Assembly (NCBI RefSeq): GCF_000143415.4 | Contig: NW_003314270.1 | Span: 1,853,048 to 1,917,047, forward strand | Length of the DNA stretch: 64,000 bases | DNA from: Selaginella moellendorffii | Taxonomy: Eukaryota; Plantae; Lycopodiophyta | Direction of reading: 5' to 3' | Notes under the pieces: generated by a model | The model's input: only the letters and a program-made list of their open reading frames with translations | Database searches by the model: none | What the model was told of the DNA's origin: nothing | Part shown: positions 7,298 to 52,799 of the stretch, piece after piece | Numbering within the stretch: position 1 is the stretch's first letter | Layout of the letters: every line of letters begins with the position of its first letter | Position numbers and translations under genes: made by a program

Positions 7298-7470
7298 CCA
7301 AGCATTGGCACCAAACAAGTTGTGTAATCTGGAACTCCTTCAAATGAAAAGATCATTCCAGGCCCTCCTCCAACTTATAAGGCTGGCTGGATTCAAGGCC
7401 ACAGATTCATTGCGTCAATAAAACGAAAACATGTTAAACGGCACTAAACACTAAACTCTGATTCTTTGTT
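7298..7470 (+). pseudogene. 3' remnant of the SSPIH peptide-precursor gene
   Basis: CACCAAACAAG..CTGGAACTCCTTCAAATGAAAAGATC..CCAGGCCCTC matches about 10890-11075 with stops and deletions. Confidence 0.75.
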
Positions 7471-10547: not shown

Positions 10548-11039
10548 ATGGAAACTCGTCTGATCTTCCAGCTGCTGCTGCTGCTGCTGCTGCTGCTCCT
10601 GGCTGGAGAGATCCACCAGGAACATGTTGGAGCTTCCGCTGCTTCTCTCGTTTCTTCTGCTGATGAAGCAGGAGCACGGCATCATCGTAATCTCTTGCAG
10701 GATTTCACGGTCCAGCTCTCGCAGGCTTACAATCTCGAGATCCCGGTAGCGACAACAGTGCTCAAAGGAAAGAGCTCGCCTATACACCCGGCAGTGAATA
10801 AAGAAATTATACTCCCAGCAGTGATCAAACGGAGGAGCTCGCCTATCCAGCCAGGACCAAAACACATTAGTGCATTCGAAAATGGATCTCCTCCAAGCAT
10901 TGACACCAAACAAGCTGTGAGATCTGGAACTCCTTCAAATGAAAAGATCGTTCCAGGCCCTCGTCCAACTCGTAACACATTTGCAGGCCGGCTGGATTCA
11001 GTGCCATCGTCGCCGATTCACTGCACAAAACCATGTTAA
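10548..11039 (+). CDS. Secreted small-peptide precursor (SSPIH-repeat family), copy A, 163 aa
   Basis: ATG 10548, poly-Leu signal peptide, RHHRNLLQ, repeats KGKSSPIHP and KRRSSPIQP, C-terminus RLDSVPSSPIHCTKPC; intronless; indels relative to paralogs are in frame. Confidence 0.7.
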   Translation: METRLIFQLLLLLLLLLLAGEIHQEHVGASAASLVSSADEAGARHHRNLLQDFTVQLSQAYNLEIPVATTVLKGKSSPIHPAVNKEIILPAVIKRRSSPIQPGPKHISAFENGSPPSIDTKQAVRSGTPSNEKIVPGPRPTRNTFAGRLDSVPSSPIHCTKPC

Positions 11040-14895: not shown

Positions 14896-15579
14896 GCTTC
14901 TTGGGTTTAATTGGATGCTTCTTGGGATTTTGGAAGCCGTCTCGTAGACAACCTCCCAGTGCTTCTTGGTTTTAAAGGGCTGCCCGCGAGAGCGCCCGAT
15001 TTCTTACAAGGGAACTGGGTCTCCTTTATATACTGATCAAACTGCAGATGTTTACTCTCCGGCATGTGGGATAGGTTGAAGTGGGTTAGAATATTCGTTT
15101 GTCCCTTCAATTATCCACCTTTTGTCTTCTCGTATACATCACATTGTATTGATTGAATAAGCCTTCCTTTACGCAACCTTTATTTCCTCCATTTTAATCT
15201 TTGCATTTGTGATGGTTTAGGAGGCCCGCTCAAGGGAGTTCTGCAAAGTAAGCAGCGTCAACCCAAGGCCAGCCTATAAACCCTCCAAAAATAGCTCACG
15301 CACGGAGGCGTGGCAACGGGCATTGACCCATTGCTTTGTTTTCCTTACTCATTAGTTTAAGGCAAGTTGTCCGTTTCTTCCTCGCCAGCTTATATACGCT
15401 GCTAAATGTCCGATTCCAATCCCCGGCAAGTGGGATATCTTTGCCCTCGCAGCATATGCTCGAATCTAGGCTATCGTGAGCTTGGAATATTTACCGGCAT
15501 ATACTTTAAAACTTTGCGATGTGGTGTGGCGCTTTTATGTACACACGAGGCCCAGCCATGGCTGAGAGCTTCTTTGCGA

Positions 15580-17991
15580 ATGGAACTGCGATGCCGAGGA
15601 ACACTACTGCCGGCACTGGCTCCCCCTTCCTCCAGGGGACTCCAAAGGTACGCTACAAAACTAAAACTCCACTACTCGAGCAAGCGTCGTCTTCCATGCC
15701 TGAAAACTTCGGAGGATTTTACAACGAGTTCTTCGACGCTGGCGTCCGCTGCAAATGCAAGGATAGAAAACGAGTTAGATCGAGAGGAACAAGAACAGAC
15801 GGCACTGCTCGAGGCTCTCAAGCAGTGGAAGACTCAAGTTGCTTGGACGAAGTTTGAGACAATGACGAAGAAGCTGGGTGTCTTACCGGATAGAGTGTGT
15901 GTGAGCAGGCTTGTAGCACAGCTCTGCCACCAAGGGACGGCGGCCAGTGTGTCCAAGGCACAGCAGATAATGGTGGAGCTCCGGCAGAAGAGGAAAGTGT
16001 CCGAGCTCGTCGACTGCGATGCAATGGGATTGTTAGTGATGGCGTCGGCGAGAGTTGGGACCGCTCACTACTCGCTGGGAGTACTAAGGACGATGCTGGA
16101 GCTGGGATATCACCCACCTGTAAAAGTTTGGAGCGCAGTGGTGTCGAAGCTCGGGAAAAACGTTGATGACGCTCAGCTCGCTCTCAAAGTTTTTGACGAG
16201 GTTTGCCAGTGCGTTGTGGAGCAAGGAATGATCCAGCTGCACAGAAAGATGGAAGTTGATGGGAAGTTTGTCGACGAGAAGCTTACCAAGAGTGATGAAG
16301 ACAAAGCTCTGATCGCTGTCGATGAGACAAAGCTAGCGAGACGTAGCGACGAAAATACGTTTGGTACTAGTTCTGGCTACTCTGAAAAGAAAGAAGCCAC
16401 TTCAACACTCCTCGTAGTGACTGCTGAAAGGGAAGAAATCGACGACTTAGAATCAGAGCAAAGTGAAAAACTCACAAACATACAACTCAAGGAGGAAAGG
16501 CAAGCACTTAAGAGGATGAAACCTGACACGGGAGCTTTCAACGCAGCACTCAACGCCTGCGCAAACATCGGCAACTTGGAGCGAGCAGAGCAACTCTGGG
16601 AACTCATGCCAGCATTCGGAGTAAAAGCAAACACGCTCACCTTCAACGTCATGATCAAGCTGTACGCTCGAGTCGAGAAGCTGGACAAGCTCGAACAAAT
16701 CCTCCACACAATGGCCGACGCAGACGTCGATCCGGACGCCACCACCTTCAACTCTTTGGTGGCTGCCTTCGTCGGCCTCGGCGAGCTCAGCCTAGCCGAG
16801 TCGATCGTCCAGAGTTTGCGAGGAGAAGGCGAGCACCAAAAGAGAGTCCCAGCGCTGCTGCCAAAGCTCCGAGAGCACAGCGCCAAGTTCCAGCCCGACG
16901 TGAGAACGTACACCACCCTGATGAAAGGCTACGTCCAGCATAACCGGGTGAGCGACGCCATGCAGCTTCTAGTGGCGATGCAGCAGGAGAAGACCTCGGC
17001 GGCGATGCCAAACGAGGTGACTTTCACCACTGCCATCCGAGCCTGCGCCAAGATGGGACTGCTAGACGAGGCCCGGGTGATCCTCCAGGAGATGGCGACG
17101 CAGAAAGTAGCCGCCAACGTCGTCACTTACAACACACTCCTCCAGGGAGTGTGCGTCTTCCCGATCACGGACATGAAGCGAGCGCTCGAGATCGTCGAGG
17201 ACATGAAGGAGGCCGGAGTGGAGCTCGACGTTGTCTCGTACAACACCCTGATCAATGGATATCTCGAGGCCGGAGACAACGAGCAAGCGCTGGCCGTCTT
17301 CACGAGGATGAGAGAGGCCAAAGTTCCGGCCTCCAAGGTGACGTATGGAACTCTGATGAAGGCCTTTGCTCGGAGCGGCCGGACGGAGCTCGTCGTCAAG
17401 GTTTTCACGCAGATGGCGCTGGACCCGAGAGTCCGAGTCGACGTCGTTGCTTGGAACACGCTGATCGATGCATACGCGAGAGCTGGCCTGGAGCAGGACG
17501 CGACGAGAGCGCTGGAAGACATGAAGAGCCGCGGCTTCTCTCCCACCAACGCGACTTACAACACGCTTGTCAAAACTTACGGGCGATCCCGGAACTTCGG
17601 ACAGCTGATCCTTCTCTGGAAAGAGATAAACGCTCGATCAGTGGAGGAAGACAGTGCTGCGGTGAGAGACAAACCTTTGGTGGTGGGAGCTCTCAAGCCG
17701 GACGCGGCGCTGCTCGACAGCCTCATCGACTCGTTCGTGCGAGGAGGATACTTTCAGCTCGCGCTCCAGGTGGTGGACTGCATGGATCGGCAGGGAATCC
17801 ACTCGGGGCGAGCCAAGGCCAAGTACAAGCGATTGTACGTGGAACTTTACGCGAACCTCTACACCAGCAGGCACACATCCGAGAGGAGGAAGTCCAAGAC
17901 GGCCGAGAGAAGACGCGCTGTGGAGGCGTTTAAGTTCTGGGTGGGACTTCCAAACAGTCTCTACAAATCGGAGTGGAGACCTTTCGAGTGA
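15580..17991 (+). CDS. HCF152: P-class plastid PPR protein, HCF152-like (intronless)
   Basis: Tandem P-type 35-aa repeats (PDTGAFNAALNACAN, PDVRTYTTLMKGY, NVVTYNTLLQG); C-terminus RRRAVEAFKFWVGLPNSLYKSEW matches my recollection of HCF152; transit-peptide-like N-terminus from Met 15580 (ORF open from 15406). Confidence 0.85.
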   Translation: MELRCRGTLLPALAPPSSRGLQRYATKLKLHYSSKRRLPCLKTSEDFTTSSSTLASAANARIENELDREEQEQTALLEALKQWKTQVAWTKFETMTKKLGVLPDRVCVSRLVAQLCHQGTAASVSKAQQIMVELRQKRKVSELVDCDAMGLLVMASARVGTAHYSLGVLRTMLELGYHPPVKVWSAVVSKLGKNVDDAQLALKVFDEVCQCVVEQGMIQLHRKMEVDGKFVDEKLTKSDEDKALIAVDETKLARRSDENTFGTSSGYSEKKEATSTLLVVTAEREEIDDLESEQSEKLTNIQLKEERQALKRMKPDTGAFNAALNACANIGNLERAEQLWELMPAFGVKANTLTFNVMIKLYARVEKLDKLEQILHTMADADVDPDATTFNSLVAAFVGLGELSLAESIVQSLRGEGEHQKRVPALLPKLREHSAKFQPDVRTYTTLMKGYVQHNRVSDAMQLLVAMQQEKTSAAMPNEVTFTTAIRACAKMGLLDEARVILQEMATQKVAANVVTYNTLLQGVCVFPITDMKRALEIVEDMKEAGVELDVVSYNTLINGYLEAGDNEQALAVFTRMREAKVPASKVTYGTLMKAFARSGRTELVVKVFTQMALDPRVRVDVVAWNTLIDAYARAGLEQDATRALEDMKSRGFSPTNATYNTLVKTYGRSRNFGQLILLWKEINARSVEEDSAAVRDKPLVVGALKPDAALLDSLIDSFVRGGYFQLALQVVDCMDRQGIHSGRAKAKYKRLYVELYANLYTSRHTSERRKSKTAERRRAVEAFKFWVGLPNSLYKSEWRPFE

Positions 17992-26255: not shown

Positions 26256-27191
26256 ATGGCGGTGCCGAATCCAAAGACGGCGCTCTATGTCGGTAAGCGC
26301 GACTGCTCCGGTGTGTTTGATCGCGTGTGTTTCTTCCGGGATTTTTGGACAACAGGAGGCTTGGATGAGAATGTGAACGAGGAGGTTCTCCACGCGGCTT
26401 TCATTCCGTTTGGCGACATCAAGGACGTGACAATGCCGCTGGATCAAGGCACGCAAAAGCACCGGGGCTTTGGATTCGTCACGTATTTGGAGAGGGACGA
26501 TGCAGCGGCTGCCATGGACAACATGCACAACTCGGAGCTCTTTGGCAAAGTGTTGACGGTGAATTACGCGCAGCCCATGAAGATCAAGGGAGGAGAACAG
26601 GGCTGGGCATCTCAACCAAGTGAGTTTTCTTCCATTTCCTTTCTTCCTCGGTTATTTGTCGTTAGATTGAGGTACACATTTATTTGGAATATCTTCCTTT
26701 AGGTGGATTTAGATTTCTTTTCTTTTTCTTCACGAGTTCTTCATTCTTATAAGAAGCCAGTTGTTTTCTCTTCTCTACTTCTCTTGCGTTTGGTTCACTA
26801 CATACTTTGTTTGTCAGTTCTTTCTCTCAACTATTACTTTTCCTCTTGTCTCTTTGATTTTTCTTTGCTATTTGTTTCACGACAGCTTCGTCTTACCTTG
26901 TTGATTTGGAATTCTATCTTTGCAGTTTGGGCGGATGCCGATACGTGGTTTGAGCGTCAACAGCGGGAGCTAGAGATGAAGAAGCTCAAGGCCGAGCAGG
27001 ATGCGACAGTCAAGGCAGCTCAAGAGGCTGAGAGAAAGAAGCTCTTGGATGCCCTCGAGGGAGAAGTGGAAGAACCAGAAGAGCCAGAAGTCACAATGCC
27101 TGTTGACCCTGCGATCATGCAGGGGACGCAAGAAGCAGAGGTCCCTTGGTATGCATTCTTTTTATCTTGTGTCCTTGCTTTCGGTGTCTGA
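26256..27191 (+). CDS. RRM protein, CYP33/PPIE-RRM-like (Arabidopsis ATE1-like); exact 3' end uncertain
   Basis: [64 protein letters not shown]. Confidence 0.88.
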
Positions 27192-28133
27192 TCTTTCCCT
27201 TACAGAGCAGAACAGTGTACTTCTCTTCTGGATTATCTGGAAACTGCAGGTAGTTTGACTTTTTAGTTATTCGGTGTTTGATGAATGTTGTCAGGTCTTT
27301 CACGTTCCTATGAAAAAAAAAGGAGCATTGTATGAGTGGGTCAGAAGTGAAGGTCAGTATGGGTCGGCTGGAAGATTGACGACCTTTGGAGGACTTGGAG
27401 GACATGCACTTCTCACGGCAGTTGTGGATGTATAGGTTGAGTAGCTCCTTCTGCTTCAGCCACTGTTTCTGGAGAACAGCCGAAATCTGTGGAGAACAGA
27501 CAATGTGAAAGTTTGTATGGGAGAGAAAAAGCAAACTCTGATCTATCGGATCTTAGAGAAGTAGCGCTATGTGTTGTCAACAAGAGCAGTAGCTGCAGCC
27601 TCAGTGCCATTACCTTTGCTTTTCTTTAGAACTATCTTTTCTTCCAACCTTTGAGGGGATGAGCGAGTTATTTTATACACACAGTATAGTTCTAGGCACG
27701 CCTAAAGTCCTCGGGCAATACCCTGAAGATTCACCAGTCAAGGAGGTTGTCAAGAAGGTTTCTTTGATCGAACGGACAACCAAGGAATAGTGGAAAGAAT
27801 TTATAAAACTGGATTGAAGCAAATGGCTCTCAAAGAAATCAATTGAAATCTTTAACACTATAGTCTTGTGATCAAGAAACTATTTATAAGAAGCAAGGAC
27901 ACGAGAGAAAAGATCCATTTCTTGTGTTTCTTGCATGATCACTGTATCTACAAACTTCCACTTCTCCCTCCAACTCATAACACATTTTCAGGGTGGCCAT
28001 TGTAGCTGATTGAGCAACGCCATAATTACCATCGGATTATAAAAAAATAGTTTCTTGATTCTGAAACTGTTTTTTTCTCTTTCTTAGTCTTGTGGTCAAG
28101 AGTCAGAGTTTATTTATTTGGTTGATTATGCGT

Positions 28134-28622
28134 TTAACATGTTTTTATGCAGTGAATCGGCGACGATGGCCCTGAATCCAGCCGGCCTCCAAATGTGTTA
28201 CGAGTTGGAGGAGGGCCTGGAACGATCTTTCCATTTGAAGGAGTTCCAGATCTCACAGCTTGCTTGGTGTCAATGCTTGGAGGAGATCCATTTTCGAATG
28301 CACTAACGTGTTTTGGTCCTGGGTGGATAGGCGAGCTCCTCCGTTTGATCACTGCTGGGAGCATAGGCGAGCTACTTTCTTTATTCACTGCTGGGTGTAT
28401 AGGCGAGCTCTTTCCTTTGATCACTGTTGTCACTACCGGGATCTCAAGAGCCTGCGAGAGCTGGACTGTGAAATCCTGCAAGAGTTTACGATGATGCCGT
28501 GCTCCTGCTTCATCAGCAGAAGAAACGAGAGAAGCAGCAGAAGCTCCAACGTGTTCCTGGTGAATTTCTCCAGCCAGGAGCAGCAGCAGCAGCAGCAGCT
28601 GGAAGATCAGACGAGTTTCCAT
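28134..28622 (-). CDS. Secreted small-peptide precursor (SSPIH-repeat family), copy B, 162 aa
   Basis: Signal peptide, RHHRKLLQ, three 12-aa repeats, C-terminus RLDSGPSSPIHCIKTC. Confidence 0.7.
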   Translation of the reverse strand: METRLIFQLLLLLLLLAGEIHQEHVGASAASLVSSADEAGARHHRKLLQDFTVQLSQALEIPVVTTVIKGKSSPIHPAVNKESSSPMLPAVIKRRSSPIHPGPKHVSAFENGSPPSIDTKQAVRSGTPSNGKIVPGPPPTRNTFGGRLDSGPSSPIHCIKTC

Positions 28623-28950
28623 GATCCGACACTTCCGAGCGCTTTTGCTTTGATCTCCTCCAACTCTGGACAACGTTTGTTCTTCCTGTTCAAATGGAAT
28701 CGCTTGCTCTCTCCAACTTTTGCTGGACTTCCAGTTCCAATGGGATCGCAGCTTTTGCTCTTCCCGTTCCAATGGGATTGCTTCTTCTCACTTGGAGATA
28801 CCCCAGCTTCATTAATGACTTTTATACACGGCTCCATCCGTCCCGGAAAAACTTTGAAAAATCATCCGTCAAAAACACGCTGTTTCGTTTGAACGAGAAT
28901 CTCGTTCCCTCCCGGTGAAACAAAAACATTCCTGAACTTTGAATCCTCGC

Positions 28951-29905
28951 CTACGAACGAAAGTAACAAGGCGACGTATGGAAGTTGTAGAGCAAAACGG
29001 AGAAAGTCTCCAGCTCGTGTAAGTCAAGTCCATCTCTCGCTACTTCTTTCCCCGATGCTGCCCAAACGAAACTCGTCCACAGTAGCGTGTCCGCCTCGTA
29101 TGGCATGTGTAGAATGTGATCCATGGCGAGAGATGGCGGATCGCTACTCATACCATTTGGCTCGTATGGCATGTGTAGTCGTGGATGTGGCCACACTGCC
29201 CCATGGCGTGGACCATGCAGCTGTAGTGCTCCCGTGGCGGTCCGACCAAAGTCAAATTTCGTTGACCTCCACCTGGCGCTGCCGGGGCTCCCCGTTGACT
29301 TATGGCGACCAGGGTGGCGGTCATCGTGATGCAGTCGGGTGGCACTGTGAGGAGCATCTCGTGAAACAGGGAGAGCGCCTCATGGGACATTGGGTGGTTA
29401 GTAAGCGCCAAGCATTGCGTTCCTCCATGTTGTCAAACAGATTCTTTGCCTGCTAGCACTGTGAATATGCAGAGAGCATCGTGTTCCAGGACGTGAGGTC
29501 CTTCTGCGGCATTGTATGAAACAAGAATTGAGCGTTTTCAAGATGCCCAATTTTGGGCATATGCCGCGAGCATTCACAACGTTGTAGCAGTTAAATAGGG
29601 ACCGACTCTCCATTCATGGACACAAGCAAAGAAACCAGAGAAATCAAGAGAGATCAACATCTGAACCACCACAACACACTACAGAACACCATCCAGCGCC
29701 CATCACTTCTCTCCTGCCATCCTCTCTCTCCAACCAAGAACTCAACCGTCGGTTAAGGTTCGACTAAACTACCTTACGCTCCTTTATTCTGAGAAACAGC
29801 CATCAACGTGGCCCTTTCTAGGCATATGTCGTTAGAATGGTGTTCCACGTCAGTAGGCTCCCGGGGCAGTGTCGAAGAAGTCCAGCCGCACTCTGGCCAT
29901 TTGTT
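28951..29905 (-). pseudogene. 3' remnant of the PLS-PPR gene, interrupted by an insertion
   Basis: Matches 34061-34860 with deletions; same lesions as 9490-10223. Confidence 0.85.
29583..29773. mobile_element. About 190-bp insertion, solo-LTR/TRIM-like
   Basis: Absent from both paralogous PPR segments; starts TGTAG, ends CTAC(C), internal TTAAATAG; no clear TSD. Confidence 0.45.
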
Positions 29906-29938: not shown

Positions 29939-30805
29939 ATGGCGGCGCCGAATCCAAAGACGGCGCCGGTGCTATCGTGTGTTTGATCGCATTGTTTCTT
30001 CCGAGATTTTTGGACAACGAGAATGTGAACGAGGGGATTCTCCACGTGGTTTCATTCCGTTTGGCGACATCAAGGACGTGACAATGCCCCTGAATCAAGG
30101 GACGATGGGGCGGCGGCCATGGACAACATGCACAACTCGGAGCTCTTTCGCTAAGTGTTGACGGTGAATTACCCGCAGCCCATGAAGATCAAGGGAAGAA
30201 CAGGGCTGGGCATCTCAACCAAGTGAGTTTTCTCTTCCATTTCCCTTCTTCCTCGTTTTTTTTTGCGTTAGAGTATATGGATTTGCTGAAGATTTCTTTT
30301 CTTTTTCTTCTTGTTCTTCGTTCTTCATTCCTATAGGAAGTCAATTGTTTTCTCTTTTCTACTTCTCTTGCCTTTGGTTCACTAGATACTTTGTTTGTCA
30401 GTTCTTTCTCTAAACTATTACTTTTCTTCTTGTCTCTTTGATTTTTCTTTGCCATTTGTTTCACGACAGCTTCGTCTTACCTTGTTGATTTGGAATTCTA
30501 TCTTTGCAGTTTTGGCCGATGCCGAGCGACAGCAGCGGGAGCTAGAGATGAAGAAGCTCAAGGCCGAGCAGGATGCCACGGTCAAGGCGGTGCAAGAGGC
30601 CGAGAGGAAGAAGCTCTTGGATGCCCTCGAGGGAGAAGTGGAAGAACCGGAAGAGCCTGAAACTACCATGCCTGTAGATCCTGCAATCTTGCAAGAAACG
30701 CAAGAAGTGGAGGTCCTTTGGTATGCTTTCTTTTCTCTCGTGTCCTTGGTCTTTCCCTTACAGAGCAAAATAGTGTGCAGAAATCTGGAACTGGAGGTAG
30801 TTTGA
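29939..30805 (+). pseudogene. Pseudogene of the RRM gene
   Basis: Matches 26256-27260 with frameshifting deletions that remove RNP1. Confidence 0.85.
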
Positions 30806-31628: not shown

Positions 31629-32221
31629 TCATGAAGATCAAGGGAGGAGAACAGGGCTGGGCATCTCAACCAAGTGAGTTTTCTTCCATTTCCTTTCTTC
31701 CTTGTTTTTTTGTCATTAGATTAAGGTACACATTATTTCCTTTAGGTGGATTTAGATTTCTTTTCTTTTTCTTCACAAGTTCCTCATTCCTATAAGAAGT
31801 CAGTTGTTTTATCTTTTCTACTTCTCTTGCCTTTGGTTCACTAGATACTTTGTTTGTCAGTACTTTCTCTCAACTATTATTTTTCTTCTTGTCTCTTTGA
31901 TTTTGCTTTGCTATTTGTTTCGTCGTCTTACTTTGTTGGAATTCTATCTTTGCAGTTTGGGCGGATGCCGAAACGTGGTTTGAGCGTCAACAGCAGGGGC
32001 TAGAGATGAAGAAGCTCAAGGCCGAGCAGGATGCGACAGTCAAGGCAGCTCAAGAGGCTGAGAGAAAGAAGCTCTTGGATGCCCTCGAGGGAGAAGTGGA
32101 AGAACCAGAAGAGCCAGAAGTCACAATGCCTTTTGACCCTGCGATCATGCAAGGGACGCAAGAAGCAGAGGTCCCTTGGTATGCATTCTTTTTATCTTGT
32201 GTCCTTGCTTTCGGTGTCTGA
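31629..32221 (+). pseudogene. 5'-truncated copy of the RRM gene
   Basis: Begins at ATGAAGATCAAGGG (equivalent to 26577); retains the intron and last exon. Confidence 0.82.
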
Positions 32222-33266
32222 TCTTTCCCTTACAGAGCAGAACAGTGTACTTCTCTTCTGGATTATCTGGAACTGCAGGTAGTTTGATCTGTAAGGAAAC
32301 CTTCGGTATTTGATGAATGTTGTCAGGTCTTCCACGTTCCTATGAAAAAAAAAGGAGCATTGTATGAGTGGGTCAGAAGTGAAGGTCAGTATGGGTCGGC
32401 TGGGACCTTTGGAGGACTTGGAGGACATGTACTTCTCACGGCAGTTGTGGATGTATAGGTTGAGTAGCTCCTTCTGCTTCAGCCACTGTTTCTGGAGAAC
32501 AGCCGAAATCTGTGGAGAACAAACAATGTGAAAGTTTGTATGGAAGAGAAAAAGCAAACTCTGATCTATCGGATCTTAGAGAGGCAGCGCTGTGTGTTGT
32601 TGTGAACAAGAGCAGCAGCGGCAGCTTCAGTCAATCAAGAGCCATTACCTTTTCTTTGCTTTAGAACTATCAACCTTTGCGGGGATGAGCTCTTCCTTGA
32701 GAGTTATTTTATACACATGGTATAATTCTAGGCACGTCTAAAGTCCTCGGGCAATACCCTGAAGATTCACCAGTCAAGGAGGTTGTCAAGGAGGTTTCTT
32801 CGATCGAACGGAATTCCAAAGTCAGTGATTCCCGGTTTATTGAGGAAAAAGCTTGAAGATTGAAACAAGGAACTAGAGAACAAAAATCTATGAGCGGGAT
32901 AGTGGAGCGAATTTATAAAACTGGATTGAAGCAAATGGCTCTCAAAGAAATCAATTGAATCTTTAACACTATAGTCTTGTGATCAAGAAACTATTTTATA
33001 AGAAGCAAGGACACGAGAGAAAAGATCCATTTCTTGTGTTTCTTGCATGATCACTGTATCTACAAACTTCGGGTTCTTCCGGTTAGAATTCCACTTCTCC
33101 CTCCAACTCATAACACATTTTCAGGGTGGCCATTGTAGCTGATTGAGCAACGCCATAATTACCATCGGATTATAAAAAAATAGTTTCTTGATTCTGAAAC
33201 TGTTTTTTTCTCTTTCTTAGTCTTGTGGTCAAGAATCAGAGTTTATTTATTTGGTTGATTATGCGT

Positions 33267-33764
33267 TTAACATGTTTTTATGCAGTGAATCGGCGACGAT
33301 GGCCCTGAATCCAGCCGGCCTCCAAATGTGTTACGAGTTGGAGGAGGGCCTGGAACGATCTTTCCATTTGAAGGAGTTCCAGATCTCACAGCTTGCTTGG
33401 TGTCAATGCTTGGAGGAGATCCATTTTCGAATGCACTAACGTGTTTTGGTCCTGGGTGGATAGGCGAGCTCCTCCGTTTGATCACTGCTGGGAGCATAGG
33501 CGAGCTACTTTCTTTATTCACTGCTGGGTGTATAGGCGAGCTCTTTCCTTTGACCACTGTTGTCACTACCGGGATCTCGAGATTGTAAGCCTGCGAGAGC
33601 TGGACCGTGAAATCCTGCAAGAGTTTACGATGATGCAGTGCTCCTGCTTCATCAGCAGAAGAAACGAGAGAAGCACCAGAAGCTCCAACGTGTTCCTGGT
33701 GGATTTCTCCAGCCAGGAGCAGCAGTAGCAGCAGCAGCAGCTGGAAGATTAGGCGAGTTTCCAT
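33267..33764 (-). CDS. Secreted small-peptide precursor (SSPIH-repeat family), copy C, 165 aa
   Basis: As copy B; intact frame; LHHRKLLQ. Confidence 0.7.
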   Translation of the reverse strand: METRLIFQLLLLLLLLLAGEIHQEHVGASGASLVSSADEAGALHHRKLLQDFTVQLSQAYNLEIPVVTTVVKGKSSPIHPAVNKESSSPMLPAVIKRRSSPIHPGPKHVSAFENGSPPSIDTKQAVRSGTPSNGKIVPGPPPTRNTFGGRLDSGPSSPIHCIKTC

Positions 33765-34060: not shown

Positions 34061-36376
34061 CTACGAACGAAAGTAAGAAGGCGACCTATGGAAGTTGTAG
34101 AGAAGAACGGAGAAAGTCTCCAGCCCGTGTAAGTCAGGCCCTTCTCTCGCTACTTCTTTCCCCGATGCTGCCCAAACGAAACTCGTCCACAGTAGCGTGT
34201 CCGGCTCGTATGGCATGTGTAGAATGAGATCAATGGCGTCGTGGATGTGGCCACCCTTCCCCAAGACGTTGACCATGCAGCTGTAGTGCTCCTTCGTGGC
34301 TGTCAGACCAAAGTCAAATGCCGTTGACCTCCACCGGGCGCTTGCGCTGCCGGGGCTCCCCGGTTGACTTGTGGCGACCAGGGTGGCGGTCATCGTGATG
34401 CAGTTGGGTGGCACTGTGAGGAGCATCTCGTGAAACAGGGAGAGCGCCTCTTGGGACATTCCGTGGTTGGAGTAAGCGCCGAGCATTGAGTTCCAGGAGA
34501 TTGTGTCGAGAGAGTCCATGCTGTCAAACAGAGTCTTTGCCTGGGAGGGGTGGCCGCACTGTGAATATGCAGAGAGCATCGTGTTCCAGGACGTGAGGTC
34601 CTTGTGTGGCATTGTATGGAACATGAATTGAGCGTTTTCAAGATGCCCATTTTGGGCATATGCTGCGAGCATGGTATTCCACGTCACAACGTTGCGCTCC
34701 TTTGTTCTAAGAAACAAGCTTGCAGTGGCATCGACGTGGCCCTTTTGGGCATATGTCGTCAGCATGGTGTTCCACGTCACTAGGCTCTTTAGCTCTTCCG
34801 GGGCAGTGTCGAAGCAGTGACGGGCCTCGTCTAGCCGTCCACTCTGGGCATTTGTGGTCAGGATGGCGTTGATTGACACCGAGTCCCATTCTTGCATAGA
34901 ATAGAACACAGAGACTGCCATCTGAAGATCCCGGTTCTGGGAATATCCGCACAGGAGAGCGTTATGGGAGACAAGATTCCTCTCCTGCATTGAGTCAAAG
35001 AGTGCTTTAGCCTCTCGCATATTCCCGTCTTGGGCATATACCGAGAGCATCGTGTTGGATGAAATGAGGCTGTGCTCTTTCATCCTGTGAAACATGTCTT
35101 TGGCATTGTTGAGCTCCGCATTGTGAAGGTAACCAGAAATCATTGCATTGTAGGAAACAATGCTTCTTTCTTCCATGGAATCAAACACGAGTTTTGCCTT
35201 TAGAGTCTGCCCAGCATGGGAATATCCGGATATAAGAGTGTTGATGGACACAATGTCGTGGGATGGCATCGAAGCAAATAAGTATTCGGCCTGGTCAAGA
35301 TAGCCACCCTCGGTATATGCCACTAGCATTGTATTCCACGCATAGAGGTTCCTTTCACGCATCAAATCAAACACTTGCTTGGCTTTGTCCAGATACCCAT
35401 TGCTCGAATATGCGGTTAGCATGATGACCCATGAGACAAGGTTATGCTCTGGCATCTTCTCAAATATTCTTTCAGCATGCGTGACAGACGCAGCTCTACT
35501 GTAAGCATCTAGCATTGCAGAGCAAGAAATGACATCTCTTTCATACATTGAAGAAAAAACTCTCTCTGCGTCGGCAAGATGCCCACAATGAGAATATGCT
35601 GTTAATAAGGCATTCCATACCACCAGGTCATGCTCCGGCATTTTGTTCCAGATTCTTGCGGCATCATCGACTTTCTGGGAATATGCCACCAAAATCACAG
35701 TCCATACAGAGAGATCGCTCACAGGCAATTGGTCGAAAAGAGCTTTCAAGTTGTAAAGGTTGTCACTAGCATGTAAGGTAAGCATGAGAGTTGATGATAC
35801 AAGATCTCTCTCAGGCATCTTATCAAAAAGAGACCTCGCATCTTCAAGATTCCCGGATCGGGCATATGCCCGAAGCATCGCGGTCCAGCACCTCATGTCA
35901 CGCTCTTGCATGGAATCAAACACCAGTTTCGCCTCTTTAATATACCCTTTTTGGGCATATGCATTTAGCATGGTTGTCCAGCACACAACATTCCATTCGA
36001 ACATTCTGTCAAAGAGGTCTTTAGCCTGGAAAAGTTGGCCGTGGCTTGCAAAGGCTGCAAGCATGGCGGACCACGAATGGAGATCTCTCTCGGGCATCTC
36101 GTCGAAGATCCTCTTTGCCCGAGAGAGATGCCCGCTTCGGGCATATGTAGTAAGCATGAACGTCCATGAGAATACGTCTTTGTTGGCGATGGACGTGAAG
36201 ATGGAGAGAGCTTCATGTACTGCTCCGAGCTTCCCATACAAGTCGAGGAGCTTGTTCGACGCATAAGTGTCGAGAGTCGAAGTAGCGCTTTGGAGAAGAC
36301 GAGCGTGGGCTTGTTTTACCGCTTTGAGAGTCTTGCAGCTTCCCAGGAGCTCGTTACATGATTTACGATCGAGCAT
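34061..36376 (-). CDS. PLS-class PPR protein (S-motif-rich, truncated E domain, no DYW); probable RNA-editing factor
   Basis: 771-aa intronless ORF with about 20 repeats of about 31 aa (W..ML.AYA..G.L..A...FD.M.ER); ends EHYSCMV..MPYEPD..LW. Confidence 0.93.
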   Translation of the reverse strand: MLDRKSCNELLGSCKTLKAVKQAHARLLQSATSTLDTYASNKLLDLYGKLGAVHEALSIFTSIANKDVFSWTFMLTTYARSGHLSRAKRIFDEMPERDLHSWSAMLAAFASHGQLFQAKDLFDRMFEWNVVCWTTMLNAYAQKGYIKEAKLVFDSMQERDMRCWTAMLRAYARSGNLEDARSLFDKMPERDLVSSTLMLTLHASDNLYNLKALFDQLPVSDLSVWTVILVAYSQKVDDAARIWNKMPEHDLVVWNALLTAYSHCGHLADAERVFSSMYERDVISCSAMLDAYSRAASVTHAERIFEKMPEHNLVSWVIMLTAYSSNGYLDKAKQVFDLMRERNLYAWNTMLVAYTEGGYLDQAEYLFASMPSHDIVSINTLISGYSHAGQTLKAKLVFDSMEERSIVSYNAMISGYLHNAELNNAKDMFHRMKEHSLISSNTMLSVYAQDGNMREAKALFDSMQERNLVSHNALLCGYSQNRDLQMAVSVFYSMQEWDSVSINAILTTNAQSGRLDEARHCFDTAPEELKSLVTWNTMLTTYAQKGHVDATASLFLRTKERNVVTWNTMLAAYAQNGHLENAQFMFHTMPHKDLTSWNTMLSAYSQCGHPSQAKTLFDSMDSLDTISWNSMLGAYSNHGMSQEALSLFHEMLLTVPPNCITMTATLVATSQPGSPGSASARWRSTAFDFGLTATKEHYSCMVNVLGKGGHIHDAIDLILHMPYEPDTLLWTSFVWAASGKEVAREGPDLHGLETFSVLLYNFHRSPSYFRS

Positions 36377-37900: not shown

Positions 37901-39313
37901 ATGAATCTCAATGTCAAGGAGTTTGCTAGAGTTTTAAAAGAGTGTGGAAACCAACGAGATTTTCTCAAAGCAAAGCACCTCCACAAGGTAATTCTCAGGA
38001 ACAGTGAGTTCAACCACAACAAGTACCTTGCAAATCTTGTGATTGAAATGTATGGAAAATGTGGGAGTCTGGAGGATTGTCTTGCGGCTTTCTATGAGAT
38101 CGAAAGGCCTAATGTCTTCTCTTGGTGCATTCTTCTCTCTGCATATGCCAGGAATGGGCATCTTCAGCAAGCCAAGGCTGTTTTCGATCTAATGCCTGAA
38201 GTAAACATCGTAGCCTGGACTTCGCTTGTGAAGTCATACGCAGATAATGGTTTGCTGCACGAAGCAGAAAGAATGTTTTGCGAAATCAAGGCAGTTTGTA
38301 ACCTTGTCTGCTGGAATTGCATGCTCGCAGCATATGCCCAACACAACCTTGTCGAGAAAATGGATTCAATCTTTTCTGAAATGCCTGCCCGTGATTTGTT
38401 CTCATGGAACTCGGTACTTTGGGCAAATGCTGAGTTTTGCGGTTTCGGAAAGACCAAGACCATGTTTGATGCGATGCCCGAGTGGGATATTATTTCATAT
38501 AATGTGATGCTTTTGGCACATACCCACACTGGGCATATCAACGACGTCGAGTCCCTCTTTGCTGCTATGCCCGAGCGCGACCTCGTCGGCTATAGCCAAA
38601 CCATTGCAGCACACATCGTGCACAAAGATCTAGACCGAGCGAAGTTGCTGTTTGATCAATTGCCGGAGCGAGACGTGATTTCTTCCACAAGATTGCTGCA
38701 AGGGTACGTGGAATCACGAAACCTCGAGGCAGCGACAGATTGCTTCAATGCTATGCATCAACTTAGCGTCCCGTCTTACAACTTAATGGTCGTGGCATAT
38801 GCCCAAGAAGGACATCTCGACTGGGCGCAAAGGGTTTTCCACGAGATTCCCGAGAGGAGCATCGTGTCGTGGACGTCGCTGGTTGAGGCATATGCCCAGA
38901 ACGGGCATCTTGGCGACGCGAGAGAGATGCTCGAGAGGATGCCCGAGAGGAATGTGGTGGCCTGGACGGCCATGGTCTCCTCGTATGCACACAATGGCTA
39001 TGGACGATTGGCAATTTCAATGTTTCGGGAGATGGAGGTTAGTGGTGAGGAGGCCAACGAGGTTACCATCTTGGGTGTTCTTCTGGCGTGTAACCACAAA
39101 GGGATGCTTGTCGAGTGCTTGGGTTGCTTCAAAGGGATCAAAGAGGACTATGGTGTTACTATGGTTGTGGATCACTATCTGGCAATGGTCGTGGTTTTGG
39201 GACGGCTTGGATATGCCAAAATCGCGAGAGATTTGCTGAATTCCATGCCTTTCATCACTGACAATCCTCGAAGTTGGGAGATCTTCCTGAGGTTTTGTGA
39301 GGGATGGACTTGA
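37901..39313 (+). CDS. PLS-class PPR protein (no DYW)
   Basis: 470-aa intronless ORF; ANLVIEMYGKCG, NVFSWCILLSAYARNG, NEVTILGVLLACNHKG, DHYLAMVVVLGRLG. Confidence 0.92.
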   Translation: MNLNVKEFARVLKECGNQRDFLKAKHLHKVILRNSEFNHNKYLANLVIEMYGKCGSLEDCLAAFYEIERPNVFSWCILLSAYARNGHLQQAKAVFDLMPEVNIVAWTSLVKSYADNGLLHEAERMFCEIKAVCNLVCWNCMLAAYAQHNLVEKMDSIFSEMPARDLFSWNSVLWANAEFCGFGKTKTMFDAMPEWDIISYNVMLLAHTHTGHINDVESLFAAMPERDLVGYSQTIAAHIVHKDLDRAKLLFDQLPERDVISSTRLLQGYVESRNLEAATDCFNAMHQLSVPSYNLMVVAYAQEGHLDWAQRVFHEIPERSIVSWTSLVEAYAQNGHLGDAREMLERMPERNVVAWTAMVSSYAHNGYGRLAISMFREMEVSGEEANEVTILGVLLACNHKGMLVECLGCFKGIKEDYGVTMVVDHYLAMVVVLGRLGYAKIARDLLNSMPFITDNPRSWEIFLRFCEGWT

Positions 39314-42296: not shown

Positions 42297-44210
42297 TCAG
42301 TGGTACTTCATGCTCGTCACGTCGAAGCCGGGCATGTCAAAAGAGGTGGCGAATTTTTCCACCTCGGCCTTGAGATTTGCGAGCTCCTTGTTGTCCACCA
42401 GTCCCTTGTTGAAGTCACGCAGCATCTTACCGTGTTGTTTCTGGATGGCGAGCGTGATGTCAATCGCCCGTCCCAGGAACTCGGCGATTTGCTCGAAGTC
42501 TTTCTCCTTGAGACCTCTTGCGGTCATGGCCGGCGCTCCTGTCCATTGCAAATAAGTTGGTTTCTCGCCAAATCTAAAGAAACATGATTTATCTCACCAA
42601 CACGGACGCCTCCAGGCGCAAGAGCACTGCTATCTCCAAACACCGCGTTCTTGTTAAGTGTTATGTGAGCGAGCTCGCACACCTTCTCGACCTTGTTTCC
42701 TGTCGAAGTAAAAACGATGGTTTGTTTTCGTTCTTCCAGCTGCGAGAGGAATTTACGTACCAGTTAGAGCGAGCGGACGCAAGTCCCAGAGGATGAGATG
42801 GTTCTCGGTGCCGTCAGTTACTATCTTGTATCCCTTCTTCATGAGCGCGTCCCCGAGAGCCGCTGCATTGGCCCGGATTTGCTTCGCGTACACCTTAAAC
42901 TCGGGTGTATTGACTTGCTTCAGTGCCACGGCCAGAGCAGCGATCTGATGGTTGTGCGGTCCTCCCTGGAGCGATGGAAACACAGCAAAGTTGACCTTGT
43001 CCTCGAAGTCGTAGTTTTCTTCCGTTGTCTGGCCCTTCTTGGGAGGCTTGGGGCCCTTTCGGTAAAAGATCATGCCGGCTCTTGGTCCTCTCAGGCTCTT
43101 GTGCGTGGTCGTCGTCACAATGTCGCAGTGCTCGAACGGACTCTTTGCCTCCTGGAATGTTTGGAATTTATGAGAAACAATCACAAAAGCCAAAATTCTT
43201 GAAGAGGACCACCACAAAAAAAAACATAGGACACGCACAAAGTTCCAGAAATATCAGCACGACCACCACCATGAAATCTCAGCGCAAACAATCCAAATTC
43301 ACCCATCTCGAGAACTTGAGAACTTCCAACAGGAAATCATTCAATCCAAATGCAGAACAAAAGAGTTCCAGAAATCTCAGCACGAGCAGCAAAGAAAGTC
43401 GCTTGTGAAATCTCAACTCAAACAATCCAAATTCGCACGCAGACATCTCGTAAACTTGAAAGCTTCCCACAAGAAACCATCCAATCCAAATGCAGACATA
43501 AACCAGATTTAAAAATCCAAATGCTCACTCACCTCGGCAGCCACGAGCCCGCTAATGTGAGCCATGTCACAGAGAAGTAGAGCTCCACATTTGTCCGCAA
43601 TAGCGCGAAGCCTGGCATAGTCCCAGTCCCTTGGATACGCGCTACCGCCGCAGATGATAAGCTTGGGCCGGAAATCCATAGCTTTCTCCTCGAGCCGGTC
43701 GTAGTCAATGTAGCCGGTCTTGGGATCCACTTTGTATGGCAAGCTCTCGAAGTAGATCGATGTGGCCGAGATCTTCTTACCCCCAGATGTGTAGTAGCCG
43801 TGGGTGAGATGGCCACCGGATGGGAGATCCAAGCCCATAATCCGGCTATGCGGCTCAAGAACAGCAGTGTAGGCGGCGAAATTCGCCGGGCTTCCAGAGT
43901 AGGGCTGGACATTCACACCCCACCTCTCCGGATCGAGGCGATAAGCCTGCAGCGCCCTGGATCGGCACAGATTCTCGATCTGGTCGATGAACTCGTTGCC
44001 GCCGTAGTAGCGATTGCCGGGTATACCTTCCGAGTACTTGTTGGTGAGCGCGCTGCCCAGCGCCTCGATCACCGCCTGCGACGTGAAGTTCTCCGACGCG
44101 ATGAGCTCGATCCCCTTCCACTGCCGCGCCTTCTCATGCTCGATCAGGTCGAAAATCTCCTCGTCCACAGCGCTCAGCGGCTGATTCCCCCACTCCTTGA
44201 CGGATGCCAT
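42297..44210 (-). CDS. SHM: Serine hydroxymethyltransferase, cytosolic (SHM4-like)
   Basis: [50 protein letters not shown]; no transit peptide from ATG 44210. Confidence 0.96.
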
Positions 44211-44812
44211 GGCCGACGAGAGAGGCGAGCGAAATCTAGCTCGCTGGAGAGCTGGGATCTGGAAAATCTGCCCCCGCAAAACCCTGGCGCCCTTCTTGCT
44301 CTTCGCGCGGCTGTGACAATGAGAACAAACTGGGAAATGCGCTACATACAAAAGCTCATGAACTTTCAACTGCATTGGATGCTTGGGTTGGCGTCCGGAA
44401 GCATCCCGGCCCTTGGCTCCTGCCAAAGCAACAGTGGCCGTCGATCGACATCCGCTGTGTGGACCATAGAACCCAGAATGGTAGCTAGCTTGAGAGTAGT
44501 CGCTGGAAAATCACCAAACCTTCGTCCACAGTAACTTACATGAAATTCGAGTTTTTAATGCTGGATCCAGTCTAGCTTGCGCTGAAAATCTTGTACAACA
44601 ACGTGCACTGAACACAATCTTAGAAAACTCGATGCGACAAAAGTTTACCCCAGCGATCTGTCATTCCAGTCGAAATGCATCAGCTACTTCCTGTATGGTA
44701 GAACGAACTAAACGAAAGCGATGTCTGATCGAGACGCAAGAATCTCTGAAGGAACCGTAGCTACCTCAAACTCCCGGGAAAATGGAGAAAACTTTTGACA
44801 AAACTTTTGCTG

Positions 44813-52037: not shown

Positions 52038-52799
52038 ATGGTTGACAAGCTCTGCCACCACAAAGTAGCCAGGATCGAGGACGGAAGGTACTTGCCGCAG
52101 CAGCGGAGTAGTCACAGCAGCAGCCGAGAGGGATCGCTGCGTCCCAAGTATAAAGGAGTACGTAAGCGGAGCTGGGGGAAGTATGTCTCGGAGATCCGGG
52201 AGCCGAACAAGAGGTCGCGGATCTGGCTCGGCTCCTTCGAGACACCCGAGATGGCGGCTCGAGCCTACGACGCTGCTGTTCTGTGCCTGAGAGGTGCCAA
52301 TTCTAGCTTCAACTTTCCAGAGTTCCTGCCTGGCCTGCCGCGTCCTTTGCCGACCACCAACAAGGAGATCCAAGCTCTGGCTGTTTTCGCTGCTCAGCAA
52401 GCTCGAGTTACTAGCACCACTGCTACCGCTGCTGCTGCTGCTGCTGCTCCTAACTTGGTTCGTGTGCAGGCACCTCCATCAATCTCTTCGACTGCTGAGT
52501 TCTACCATCGGAGAAGATCCAGTCAAGAAAGCCTCCGAGCTGTTCCCGACGAGAGTGGCGGTGGCAGCAAGCGAGGCGCAGTAGGTCCAGTCGCTCAGAG
52601 TTCCAATCCAAACGCATCGTCTACATCAGCAGCGCCTGTGTCAGCACCGAACTCGTCGCGTTCCACGACATCTAGTGACACAGTACCGGCTGCTGTCGGC
52701 TCCACCGAGATACTTTCAGCAATCCCACTGTGGATGGACGCTCCAGAAGACGCGAGTGACTTGGATCTCTGGACGTATCCCGAGTTTCCATGCACCTGA
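52038..52799 (+). CDS. AP2/ERF transcription factor, DREB subfamily
   Basis: [53 protein letters not shown]; acidic C-terminus with LW motif. Confidence 0.93.

What the first reader, a model, noticed from the sequence alone, without database searches (positions are those of the whole stretch)
28134..28622. Unannotated secreted multi-peptide precursor family with 12-aa CLE-like repeats
Seen: an intronless ORF with a poly-Leu signal peptide, an HHRKLL motif, three tandem 36-nt units (TVIKGKSSPIHP / AVNKESSSPMLP / AVIKRRSSPIHP), then KIVPGPPPTRN and a C-terminal GRLDSGPSSPIH-CIKTC. Known: mature CLE peptides are 12-mers; CLE45 is RRVRRGSDPIHN, which aligns in register with AVIKRRSSPIHP. PIP peptides begin RLxSGPS, and RxLL-type sites are cut by subtilases such as S1P. 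Inference: one precursor releasing several CLE/PIP-like ligands, plus a Cys-x3-Cys tail I do not recognise from those families. It lacks the CLE N-terminal Arg and terminal Asn/His, so it may be a new lycophyte peptide-hormone or phytocytokine class.
Basis: partly seen in the sequence, partly recalled or inferred. Interest (0 to 1): 0.85.

Follow-up and report, generated by a model that had tools for sequence, protein, structure and literature searches.

The report
Spikemoss-only secreted repeat-peptide precursor family
This is a real, transcribed family of small secreted proteins found only in the spikemoss Selaginella moellendorffii, built like a plant peptide-hormone or defence-peptide precursor but belonging to no described family, and its function is still only inferred.

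Summary
Window 28134-28622 (minus strand) is an intact 162-aa ORF with a poly-Leu N-terminus, HHRKLL, three 36-nt tandem units and a C-terminal RLDSGPSSPIH-CIKTC.

- **Origin:** the window is S. moellendorffii scaffold GL377574.1.
- **"Unannotated" is wrong:** the exact proteins are already in NCBI/UniRef. Their named paralogues are called "hypothetical protein".
- **Copy number:** three copies lie in the window, seven intact copies plus decayed relics in the assembly.
- **Evidence for a gene:**
  - Only this frame is stop-free in all seven copies.
  - All four CDS indels are multiples of three, while the flanks are full of other indels.
  - A TATA box and an AATAAA signal are conserved.
  - RNA-library contigs from five studies cover the CDS but not its flanks.
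- **Homology:** searches found nothing outside this species.
- **Membership:** it fails the defining tests for CLE, IDA, PIP and CTNIP. It keeps only an S(G/A/V)PS core and a recurring SSPIH motif.
- **Selection, an unexpected pattern:** the signal and acidic pro-region are conserved. The basic, disordered Pro/Ser-rich C-region takes mostly amino-acid-changing substitutions.

Best reading: a lineage-specific secreted pre-pro-protein, probably processed into bioactive peptides. Whether these are ligands or defence peptides is unresolved.

The scan very likely noted the same family on other DNA (s1-346892).

The parts
28134..28622 (-). Copy W1: intronless CDS, 162 aa (protein P0003), the finding itself
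   Evidence: only stop-free frame in all 7 copies
28569..28622 (-). Signal-peptide-like N-terminus, residues 1-18: METR, then a hydrophobic core of L5-L16 with 8-10 Leu, then A-G before Glu. The Leu run is a CTG/CAG microsatellite (28575-28599) whose length varies in frame between copies.
   Evidence: Hydropathy peak 3.1; AF2 helix 2-24; TRF period 3; no SignalP available
28431..28568 (-). Acidic, His-rich pro-region, residues 19-64 (net charge -3/-4, pI 5.7), with a predicted helix at 39-59. Under purifying selection among paralogues.
28479..28490 (-). RKLL (residues 45-48), a candidate S1P/SBT6.1-type dibasic-x-Leu cleavage site. Kept in 6 of 7 copies; RNLL in W3.
   Evidence: RRXL site of RALFs cited; cleavage itself is inferred
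28320..28427 (-). Three tandem 36-nt / 12-aa units (residues 66-101). Units 1 and 3 end in SSPIHP. Unit 2 is degenerate and has lost SSP in 4 of 7 copies.
28197..28229 (-). KIVPGPPPTRN module (residues 132-142). It resembles CLE or IDA only if one gap is allowed.
   Evidence: by inspection against the Selaginella CLE motifs printed
28152..28184 (-). C-terminal module RLDS(G/V/A)PSSPIH (residues 147-157). It has the S(G,A,V)PS core of IDA/PIP plus a third SSPIH encoded by different codons.
28137..28151 (-). C-x-K-x-C tail (residues 158-162). Both Cys and the Lys are invariant in 7 of 7 copies.
28110..28119 (-). AATAAATAAA poly(A) signal, 15-24 nt after the stop and conserved in all 7 copies. 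RNA unitigs end at about 28106.
28819..28826 (-). TATAAAAG box 204 nt upstream of the ATG, conserved in all 7 copies within indel-rich flanks
33267..33764 (-). Copy W2, 165 aa (P0004). CDS is 98.4% identical to W1.
10548..11039 (+). Copy W3, 163 aa (P0006). Differs by RNLL, a shortened unit 2, SSPIQ in unit 3, and SVPS and TKPC at the C-terminus.
7298..7375 (+). Decayed relic of a further copy (residues 115-140, with an internal stop)

Best explanation
This is a lineage-specific tandem gene family of Selaginella moellendorffii that encodes small secreted pre-pro-proteins.

**Architecture**
- A cleavable poly-Leu signal peptide.
- An acidic, helical pro-region that ends near a conserved RKLL subtilase-type site.
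- A 95-98-aa basic C-region (net +8/+9, pI about 10.5). It is intrinsically disordered and rich in Pro and Ser. It carries three SSPIH modules, a KIVPGPPPTRN module, and a C-terminal RLDS(G/A/V)PSSPIH followed by an invariant C-x-K-x-C.

**Most likely mechanism (inferred)**
1. The protein enters the ER and loses its signal peptide.
2. The pro-region is cut off at RKLL.
3. Prolines next to Ser are hydroxylated.
4. The C-region is released whole or cut at KGK/KRR sites into short peptides that act outside the cell.

The peptides could be ligands in the style of the SGP-rich superfamily (CLE/IDA/PIP/CEP) or fast-evolving cationic defence peptides.

**Shown here:** the gene is intact, maintained in frame, multi-copy and transcribed.

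**Inferred only:** secretion, cleavage, modification and bioactivity.

It is not a member of CLE, IDA, PIP or CTNIP.
For: **Gene reality**
- Seven intact copies.
- The sense frame is the only one of six without stops in all copies.
- The CDS has 4 gap blocks, all multiples of 3. The flanks have 35 gap blocks in 1115 columns, only 11 of them multiples of 3.
- The in-frame stretch upstream of the ATG carries 19-, 10- and 13-nt indels, which fixes the start codon.
- TATA and AATAAA elements are conserved in 7 of 7 copies.
- Relics without the N-terminus have decayed: one has a stop, and another has its C-terminal motif degraded to WLHSRPQIHC.

**Transcription**
- RNA-library unitigs of X1 and X7 cover 28106-28536. 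Depth is zero over 27592-28103 and 28616-28871.
- Cutting the query from 1001 bases to a 471-base stretch over the CDS roughly doubled the share of words held (0.39 to 0.76). Fourteen RNA-type runs from five studies hold it.

**Architecture**
- Hydropathy and charge partition.
- AF2 gives pLDDT 49.6, helices only at 2-24 and 39-59, and coil at 60-162.

**Motifs**
- SGPS, SVPS and SAPS across copies match the S(G,A,V)PS core defined for IDA/PIP.
- The first seven residues, RLDSGPS, match AtPIP1's RLASGPS at 6 of 7.
- SSPIH recurs at the C-terminus with different codons. It shares 15/36 nt with the repeat unit. My rough, after-the-fact estimate of the chance of an exact 5-aa match there, from the residue frequencies, is about 5e-4.
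- A predicted Brassica CLE motif, RIPRSGSSPIHN, also carries SSPIH.

**Language-model neighbours**
- These are plant peptide-hormone precursors, but at weak scores.
Against: - No homologue exists outside this species, so motif conservation over time is untested.
- Overall paralogue omega is about 0.7.
- The putative peptide region has S=3 and N=27, meaning neutral or diversifying change. Substitutions are not clearly excluded from the motif cores.
- The middle unit has decayed in 4 of 7 copies.
- One copy has His changed to Gln in unit 3, and one has His changed to Asn in the C-terminal motif.
- No terminal Asn or GxGH is present, and these are what anchor known ligands in LRR-RK pockets.
- Raw RNA-seq run X21 gave zero reads on the CDS in 9.2 million reads.
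- The 5' end of the transcript is unresolved. No signal-peptide predictor was available.
Confidence: 0.55

Rival explanations
1. Host-defence reading. The basic Pro/Ser-rich C-region is itself the product, an antimicrobial or otherwise pathogen-facing secreted polypeptide. The acidic pro-piece neutralises it until cleavage. The family evolves in an arms race rather than as a conserved hormone.
For: - The pre-pro region is conserved (S=12, N=4) while the mature region changes fast (S=3, N=27; Fisher p=1.5e-5; excess of amino-acid changes p=0.029).
- Net charge is held at +8/+9 despite the changes, against a -3/-4 pro-piece.
- The family is a tandem cluster with copy turnover and relics.
- It is restricted to one species.
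- From my own knowledge: a conserved pre-pro region with a hypervariable cationic mature part is typical of defence peptides and toxins.
Against: - There is no similarity to any known antimicrobial family.
- It has only two Cys, and no amphipathic structure is predicted.
- Substitution counts are small, and gene conversion between copies could distort them (mosaic flank identities).
Confidence: 0.2
2. An unprocessed secreted disordered protein, such as a hydroxyproline-rich or lightly glycosylated cell-wall or apoplast protein. The repeats would be structural and not peptide units.
For: - Pro is 11.8% and Ser 13.9% of the sequence, with many isolated S-P and G-P sites suited to Hyp-O-glycosylation.
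- Residues 60-162 are fully coil.
- Unit number and content vary between copies.
Against: - PAST content is only 39%, below typical arabinogalactan proteins.
- It has no SPPPP extensin blocks and no GPI signal.
- Dibasic KGK/KRR sites and RKLL are conserved.
- The exact SSPIH motif is kept at three places using different codons.
Confidence: 0.13
3. A young orphan gene family with little or no function. It would be kept open only because the copies are recent duplicates homogenised by gene conversion, and transcribed at noise level.
For: - Overall omega is about 0.7, not significantly below 1 (S=15, N=31).
- There are no orthologues.
- RNA depth is low, 4-30 against 330 for the neighbouring gene, and zero in X21.
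Against: - The indel spectrum shows clear frame maintenance against the flanks.
- The pre-pro region is under purifying selection (p=6e-5).
- Truly decayed relics exist for comparison.
- TATA and poly(A) signals are conserved.
- Transcripts were found in five independent studies.
Confidence: 0.09
4. A true, merely divergent member of the CLE or PIP/IDA family, homologous and perceived by the orthologous receptors.
For: - It has the S(G,A,V)PS core and an RLxSGPS start.
- If one deletion and one insertion are allowed, RLDSGPSSPIH matches the Selaginella CLE motif RLVPSGPDPLHH at R, L, S, G, P, P and H (by inspection).
Against: - Key CLE positions P4, G6, P7 and N12 are not met in register.
- The (R/K)(R/K)HN and GxGH tails are absent.
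- A low-stringency CLE predictor run on the S. moellendorffii proteome lists 8 CLEs, none from this family.
- There are no Pfam or HMMER hits.
- PIPs are reported to arise only in angiosperms.
Confidence: 0.03

Closest known systems
PIP/PIPL (PAMP-induced secreted peptides; AtPIP1 RLASGPSPRGRGH)
   Same: - Secreted precursor.
- C-terminal module starts RL-x-SGPS (6 of 7 identical).
- S(G,A,V)PS core.
- Could end in His.
- Some PIPs carry two tandem motifs.
   Different: - No GxGH.
- The motif is not at the extreme C-terminus; a CIKTC tail follows it.
- The precursor is twice as long, with extra repeats.
- PIPs are reported only from seed plants or angiosperms.
IDA/IDL (AtIDA PIPPSAPSKRHN; MpIDA1 EVPPQGPSPIHN)
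   Same: GPS-(S)PIH resembles the GPSPIHN of the Marchantia IDA, and it shares the SGPS core.
   Different: - One extra Ser.
- No terminal Asn; the published SmIDA1-3 keep His-Asn.
- Multi-module architecture.
CLE peptides, especially the CLE45 type (RRVRRGSDPIHN; predicted Brassica RIPRSGSSPIHN)
   Same: - 12-aa register.
- S-x-P-I-H core.
- Basic residues before it.
- Multi-domain CLE precursors exist (multi-domain CLEs from my own knowledge).
   Different: - Lacks R1 in the repeat units.
- Lacks P4, G6 and N12 throughout.
- Not called by a CLE predictor on this proteome.
CTNIP/SCREW phytocytokines (HSL3 ligands)
   Same: An IDA-like linear core followed by a C-terminal Cys pair that could form a disulfide cap.
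   Different: CTNIPs need 9-11 residues between the Cys (Cys58-Cys68). Here the spacing is C-x3-C, there is no sequence similarity, and CTNIPs were traced back only to the base of the angiosperms in that study.
Hydroxyproline-rich systemin precursors (preproHypSys, 146 aa, three peptides)
   Same: Same size class. Signal peptide plus several Pro/Ser-rich peptides in one precursor, and a defence context.
   Different: No sequence homology was shown. HypSys is confined to Solanaceae and Convolvulaceae and has contiguous Hyp blocks.

Membership tests
CLE | 12-13-aa motif with R/H1, P4, G6, P7, P9, H11, N/H12 near the C-terminus | tested here: not met
   - The repeat units keep only P9 and H11.
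- RLDSGPSSPIHC keeps R1, P9 and H11.
- Compared by inspection with the 7 S. moellendorffii CLE motifs printed (an eighth id, Sm86322, was cut off).
CLE | Recognised by family models or predictors | tested here: not met
   - No Pfam hit at E up to 10 for the whole protein or its pieces.
- The Zhang 2020 supplement lists 8 Sm CLEs, none with SSPIH and none with the known ids of this family.
IDA/IDL | S(G,A,V)PS core motif | tested here: met
   SGPS (W1, W2), SVPS (W3, P0005, P0002, P0007) and SAPS (P0001) at residues 150-153.
IDA/IDL | Core followed by (R/K)(R/K)HN; C-terminal His-Asn anchors the peptide in HAE/HSL | tested here: not met
   The core is followed by SPIH-C, and there is no HN anywhere in the protein.
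PIP/PIPL | SGPS core plus GxGH at the extreme C-terminus | tested here: not met
   The core is present, but GxGH is absent and five residues (CIKTC) follow the His.
CTNIP/SCREW | Two conserved Cys 9-11 residues apart forming a cyclic C-terminal loop | tested here: not met
   The Cys pair is C158 and C162, with 3 residues between them.
Generic post-translationally modified small-peptide precursor (SGP-rich superfamily style) | N-terminal signal peptide | tested here: inconclusive
   - It has an n-region with Arg, a 12-14-residue Leu core and an A-G cleavage context.
- Hydropathy reaches 3.1 and AF2 predicts a helix at 2-24.
- No SignalP was run.
Generic post-translationally modified small-peptide precursor (SGP-rich superfamily style) | Variable pro-region with a conserved C-terminal peptide motif | tested here: not met
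   Among the 7 paralogues the pattern is reversed: pre-pro S=12, N=4 and C-region S=3, N=27. Cross-species conservation could not be tested.
Generic post-translationally modified small-peptide precursor (SGP-rich superfamily style) | Proteolytic release and Pro hydroxylation of a 5-20-aa peptide | not testable with these tools
   This needs peptidomics. Only candidate sites (RKLL, KGK, KRR, S-P) are visible in the sequence.
HypSys-type multi-peptide precursor | One 146-165-aa secreted precursor yielding several Hyp-rich glycopeptides | not testable with these tools
   The architecture is similar. No homology was detected by the HMMER search of 1.84 billion representative proteins.

The most novel reading that the evidence does not exclude
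A lycophyte-born class of SGP-type peptide ligands. One precursor would release several hydroxyprolinated ...SSPIH peptides plus a C-terminal RLDSGPSSPIH peptide capped by a small C-x3-C disulfide loop. One of the HSL/CLV1/PXY-clade LRR receptor kinases of Selaginella would perceive them, and ligand and receptor would diversify quickly. This would be an independent invention of a cyclic-tailed IDA/PIP-like phytocytokine outside seed plants.
Probability: 0.2. Interest if true: 0.65.

Novelty: new variant of a known kind. Interest (0 to 1): 0.4.

Why it matters
PIP peptides are reported to arise only in angiosperms and CEPs in gymnosperms, and lycophyte IDA and CLE ligands are few. Selaginella nevertheless has several LRR-RK XI receptors of the HSL clade.

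A species-restricted, expressed, multi-module precursor with an SGPS core gives a concrete candidate for lineage-specific ligands or defence peptides in an early vascular plant.

The selection pattern is also an example of the rule used to find peptide hormones ("conserved C-terminal motif, variable pro-region") failing to hold. Here the pre-pro region is conserved and the mature region diversifies.

As it stands, this is a well-supported gene family with an unproven function. It is not a demonstrated hormone.

Tried and rejected
- **Pfam:** scans of the whole protein, three pieces and four paralogues at E up to 10 gave only a spurious LSDAT_euk match at E about 0.2.
- **Word-indexed search of 5.8 billion proteins:** found only the family's own two clusters.
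- **Same search with residues 95-162 alone:** no candidate shares three words.
- **Full HMMER profile search of 1.84 billion representatives:** found the family's own cluster plus two unrelated tandem-repeat proteins (P0008, P0009). I rejected these after reading them.
- **PDB sequence search of residues 100-162:** nothing below E about 1.
- **ESM Atlas:** all scores were below 0.9. I used them as a weak lead only.
- **AF2 model:** pLDDT 49.6, so no fold search was run.
- **Literature searches:** neither the SELMODRAFT ids nor the motif strings appear in any paper.
- **Supplements of Furumizu 2021 (SmIDA sequences):** not held as text.
- **Antisense 210-aa ORF (28260-28892, +):** rejected. It is cut short in W2 (111 aa), every reverse frame has stops within the CDS range in all copies, and there is no RNA over its 5' part.
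- **CTNIP reading of the Cys pair:** rejected on spacing.
- **Bacterial promoter/terminator scan:** not relevant to a plant gene.
- **Run X21 raw reads:** no reads on the CDS, so no strand information was obtained.

Full report
**Observation**

The ORF is on the minus strand, 28134-28622. Tandem Repeats Finder reports a 36-nt period with 3.0 copies at 28319-28426 and a CAG/CTG run at 28575-28599, which encodes the poly-Leu stretch. The three 36-nt units are 28-31/36 identical to one another.

**Origin and copy number**

- tblastn of the protein against the window finds two more full copies, 33267-33764 (-) and 10548-11039 (+), and a relic at 7298-7375 with an internal stop.
- The database search returns only Selaginella moellendorffii proteins: SELMODRAFT_405538 and 408887.
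- The end of the window is 100% identical to the end of locus L002 on scaffold GL377574.1 of GCA_000143415.2. Window 20930-43601 is collinear at 95-97.6% with GL377569.1.
- Exact look-up shows that the three window proteins are themselves in NCBI, UniRef and nr. Their names are masked because they belong to the window. The cluster mates 405536 and 405532 are named "hypothetical protein".
- The family therefore has seven intact copies on two scaffolds of a diploid assembly, plus a truncated relic in L002 (7822-8196). That relic lacks the N-terminus, has lost one unit, and has a C-terminal motif decayed to WLHSRPQIHC.
- "Unannotated" is therefore not correct. "Uncharacterised" is.

**Is it a gene?**

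- In an alignment of the seven copies with 500 nt upstream and 330 nt downstream, the CDS has four gap blocks (3, 6, 6 and 9 nt), all in frame. The flanks have 35 gap blocks in 1115 columns, of which only 11 are multiples of three.
- The open stretch upstream of the ATG carries 19-, 10- and 13-nt indels. Translation therefore starts at the ATG at 28620-28622.
- Of the six frames, only the sense frame is free of stops in all copies.
- A TATAAAAG box 204 nt upstream and an AATAAATAAA signal 15-24 nt after the stop are identical in all seven copies.

**Transcription**

- RNA-library contigs of runs X1 and X7 cover 28106-28536. Depth is zero over 27592-28103 and 28616-28871, which argues against DNA carry-over. 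The repeat at 28570-28609 is skipped by the tool.
- Cutting the query from 1001 bases to a 471-base stretch over the CDS roughly doubled the share of words held (0.39 to 0.76 in X1). Fourteen RNA-type runs from five studies hold it.
- Depth is low: 4-30 against 135-330 for the neighbouring gene. One raw-read run (X21, 9.2 million reads sampled) had no read on the CDS. Expression is therefore weak or conditional, and no strand information was obtained.
- The 5' end of the transcript is unresolved.

**Architecture**

- Residues 1-18 form a signal-peptide-like segment: Arg4, a Leu core with hydropathy up to 3.1, then A-G before Glu.
- Residues 19-64 are acidic and His-rich (net -3/-4, pI 5.7).
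- Residues 65-162 are basic (net +8/+9, pI 10.5), with 16 Pro and 15 Ser.
- AlphaFold2 gives mean pLDDT 49.6. It predicts helices only at 2-24 and 39-59 and coil from 60 to 162.
- RKLL at 45-48 lies in the second helix. It fits the dibasic-x-Leu form of S1P/SBT6.1 sites (RRXL in RALFs). From my own knowledge, RKLL and RRLL are the processing motifs of pectin methylesterases. The site is RNLL in copy W3.

**Motifs**

- SSPIH occurs in units 1 and 3 and again in the C-terminal RLDS(G/V/A)PSSPIH. The C-terminal copy uses different codons and shares only 15/36 nt with the repeat unit, against a null mean maximum of 17. It is therefore not a recent duplicate. By my rough estimate from the residue frequencies, an exact 5-residue recurrence there has a chance of about 5e-4. 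This calculation was made after seeing the motif.
- The residue between S and P varies G/V/A across copies. [quoted passage not shown]
- The first seven residues match AtPIP1 (RLASGPSPRGRGH) at 6 of 7.
- GPS-SPIH resembles the Marchantia IDA EVPPQGPSPIHN with one extra Ser.
- A predicted Brassica CLE motif, RIPRSGSSPIHN, and the CLE45-type motif RRVRRGSDPIHN share the S-x-P-I-H end.
- C158, K160 and C162 are invariant.

**Membership tests**

- **CLE:** positions P4, G6, P7 and N12 are not met in register by any unit. A low-stringency CLE predictor applied to this proteome lists eight CLEs, and none belongs to this family.
- **IDA:** the core is met, but the (R/K)(R/K)HN tail is absent. The published SmIDA1-3 keep His-Asn, so they are different genes.
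- **PIP:** the core is met, but GxGH is absent and the motif is not terminal.
- **CTNIP:** this family needs 9-11 residues between the Cys, and here there are three.
- **Sequence searches:** Pfam, PDB and HMMER searches against 1.84 billion representatives give nothing. The two extra HMMER hits are unrelated tandem-repeat proteins.
- **Language-model neighbours:** these are plant peptide-hormone precursors (CEP9, IDL5, RGF/GLV, CLE, PSK), but at scores of 0.5-0.8. They are leads only.

**Selection**

- Pairwise Nei-Gojobori dN/dS among the copies ranges from 0.17 to 1.35.
- Counting events over the alignment gives S=15 and N=31, an omega of about 0.7.
- The split is striking. The first 61 codons (signal plus pro-region) have S=12 and N=4, fewer amino-acid changes than neutral (p=6e-5). 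The last 98 codons have S=3 and N=27, an excess (p=0.029). Fisher's test between the halves gives p=1.5e-5.
- Amino-acid changes fall in and between the modules. Examples are His to Gln in unit 3 of W3, His to Asn in the C-terminal motif of P0001, and loss of SSP from unit 2 in four copies.
- This is the reverse of the classical "variable pro-region, conserved peptide" pattern. It resembles families with a conserved pre-pro region and a diversifying mature part.
- Caveats: the counts are small, the copies are recent, and the mosaic flank identities point to gene conversion.

**Reading**

- The family is a real, expressed, lineage-specific set of genes for secreted pre-pro-proteins.
- I think the C-region is most probably released by cleavage and acts outside the cell.
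- Secretion, cleavage, hydroxylation and activity are all inferred.
- The genomic surroundings are ordinary: PPR, NPH3, SHMT, AP2 and WD40 genes. They give no functional hint.

**Earlier notes of the scan**

- Note s1-339455 concerns copy W3 on this window and agrees with my reading.
- Note s1-346892 sits on another piece and describes 486-letter genes with copies at 32.7, 34.9, 50.7 and 53.5 kb. The 15.8-kb and 2.8-kb spacings match those of P0007, P0005 and P0001 on GL377569.1. It is very probably the same family.

Noticed in passing
window 27400-27551: A strongly expressed neighbouring transcript end (word depth 135-330 in X1; X21 reads with the first mate on the minus strand). Two sites, 27441 G>C and 27468 T>G, appear in about half of the reads. 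This looks like an allele or paralogue mixture.
   Followed up: no
window 26493-27177 vs 30098-30748; 26576-27776 vs 31630-32812: Internal segmental repeats (83-90% identity) surround the peptide genes. The 1.4-1.8-kb gene-bearing unit has been duplicated together with its flanking DNA.
   Followed up: partly
window 20930-43601 vs L001 (GL377569.1); window 63321-64000 vs L002: The region is collinear with a second scaffold at 95-97.6% identity. A further copy plus a relic lies on the window's own scaffold about 9 kb beyond the window end, and its flanks are 99.8% identical to those on the other scaffold. Both haplotypes, or an assembly duplication, seem to be represented.
   Followed up: partly
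window 28260-28892 (+): A long antisense ORF (210 aa from TTG) overlaps the gene. It is cut short in copy W2 (111 aa), the reverse frames have stops within the CDS range, and its 5' part has no RNA. It is a by-product of codon composition.
   Followed up: yes
L002 7822-8196 and window 7298-7375: Decayed relics of further family copies. They show loss of the signal-peptide end, a whole-unit deletion, a degraded C-terminal motif and an internal stop. They are useful as a picture of neutral decay in this family.
   Followed up: yes
window 28616-28870: No RNA unitigs lie between the ATG and the conserved TATA box 204 nt upstream, so the 5' UTR and start site remain undefined. A separate small covered patch at 28929-28968 has unmatched leading letters.
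   Followed up: no
window 15406-17991 (+), 34061-36376 (-), 37901-39313 (+): Three intronless PPR genes are interleaved with the peptide-gene copies. Other neighbours are NPH3 (4573-5925), SHMT (43509-44426), AP2 (52038-52799) and a UBA-domain ORF (57275-58831).
   Followed up: partly
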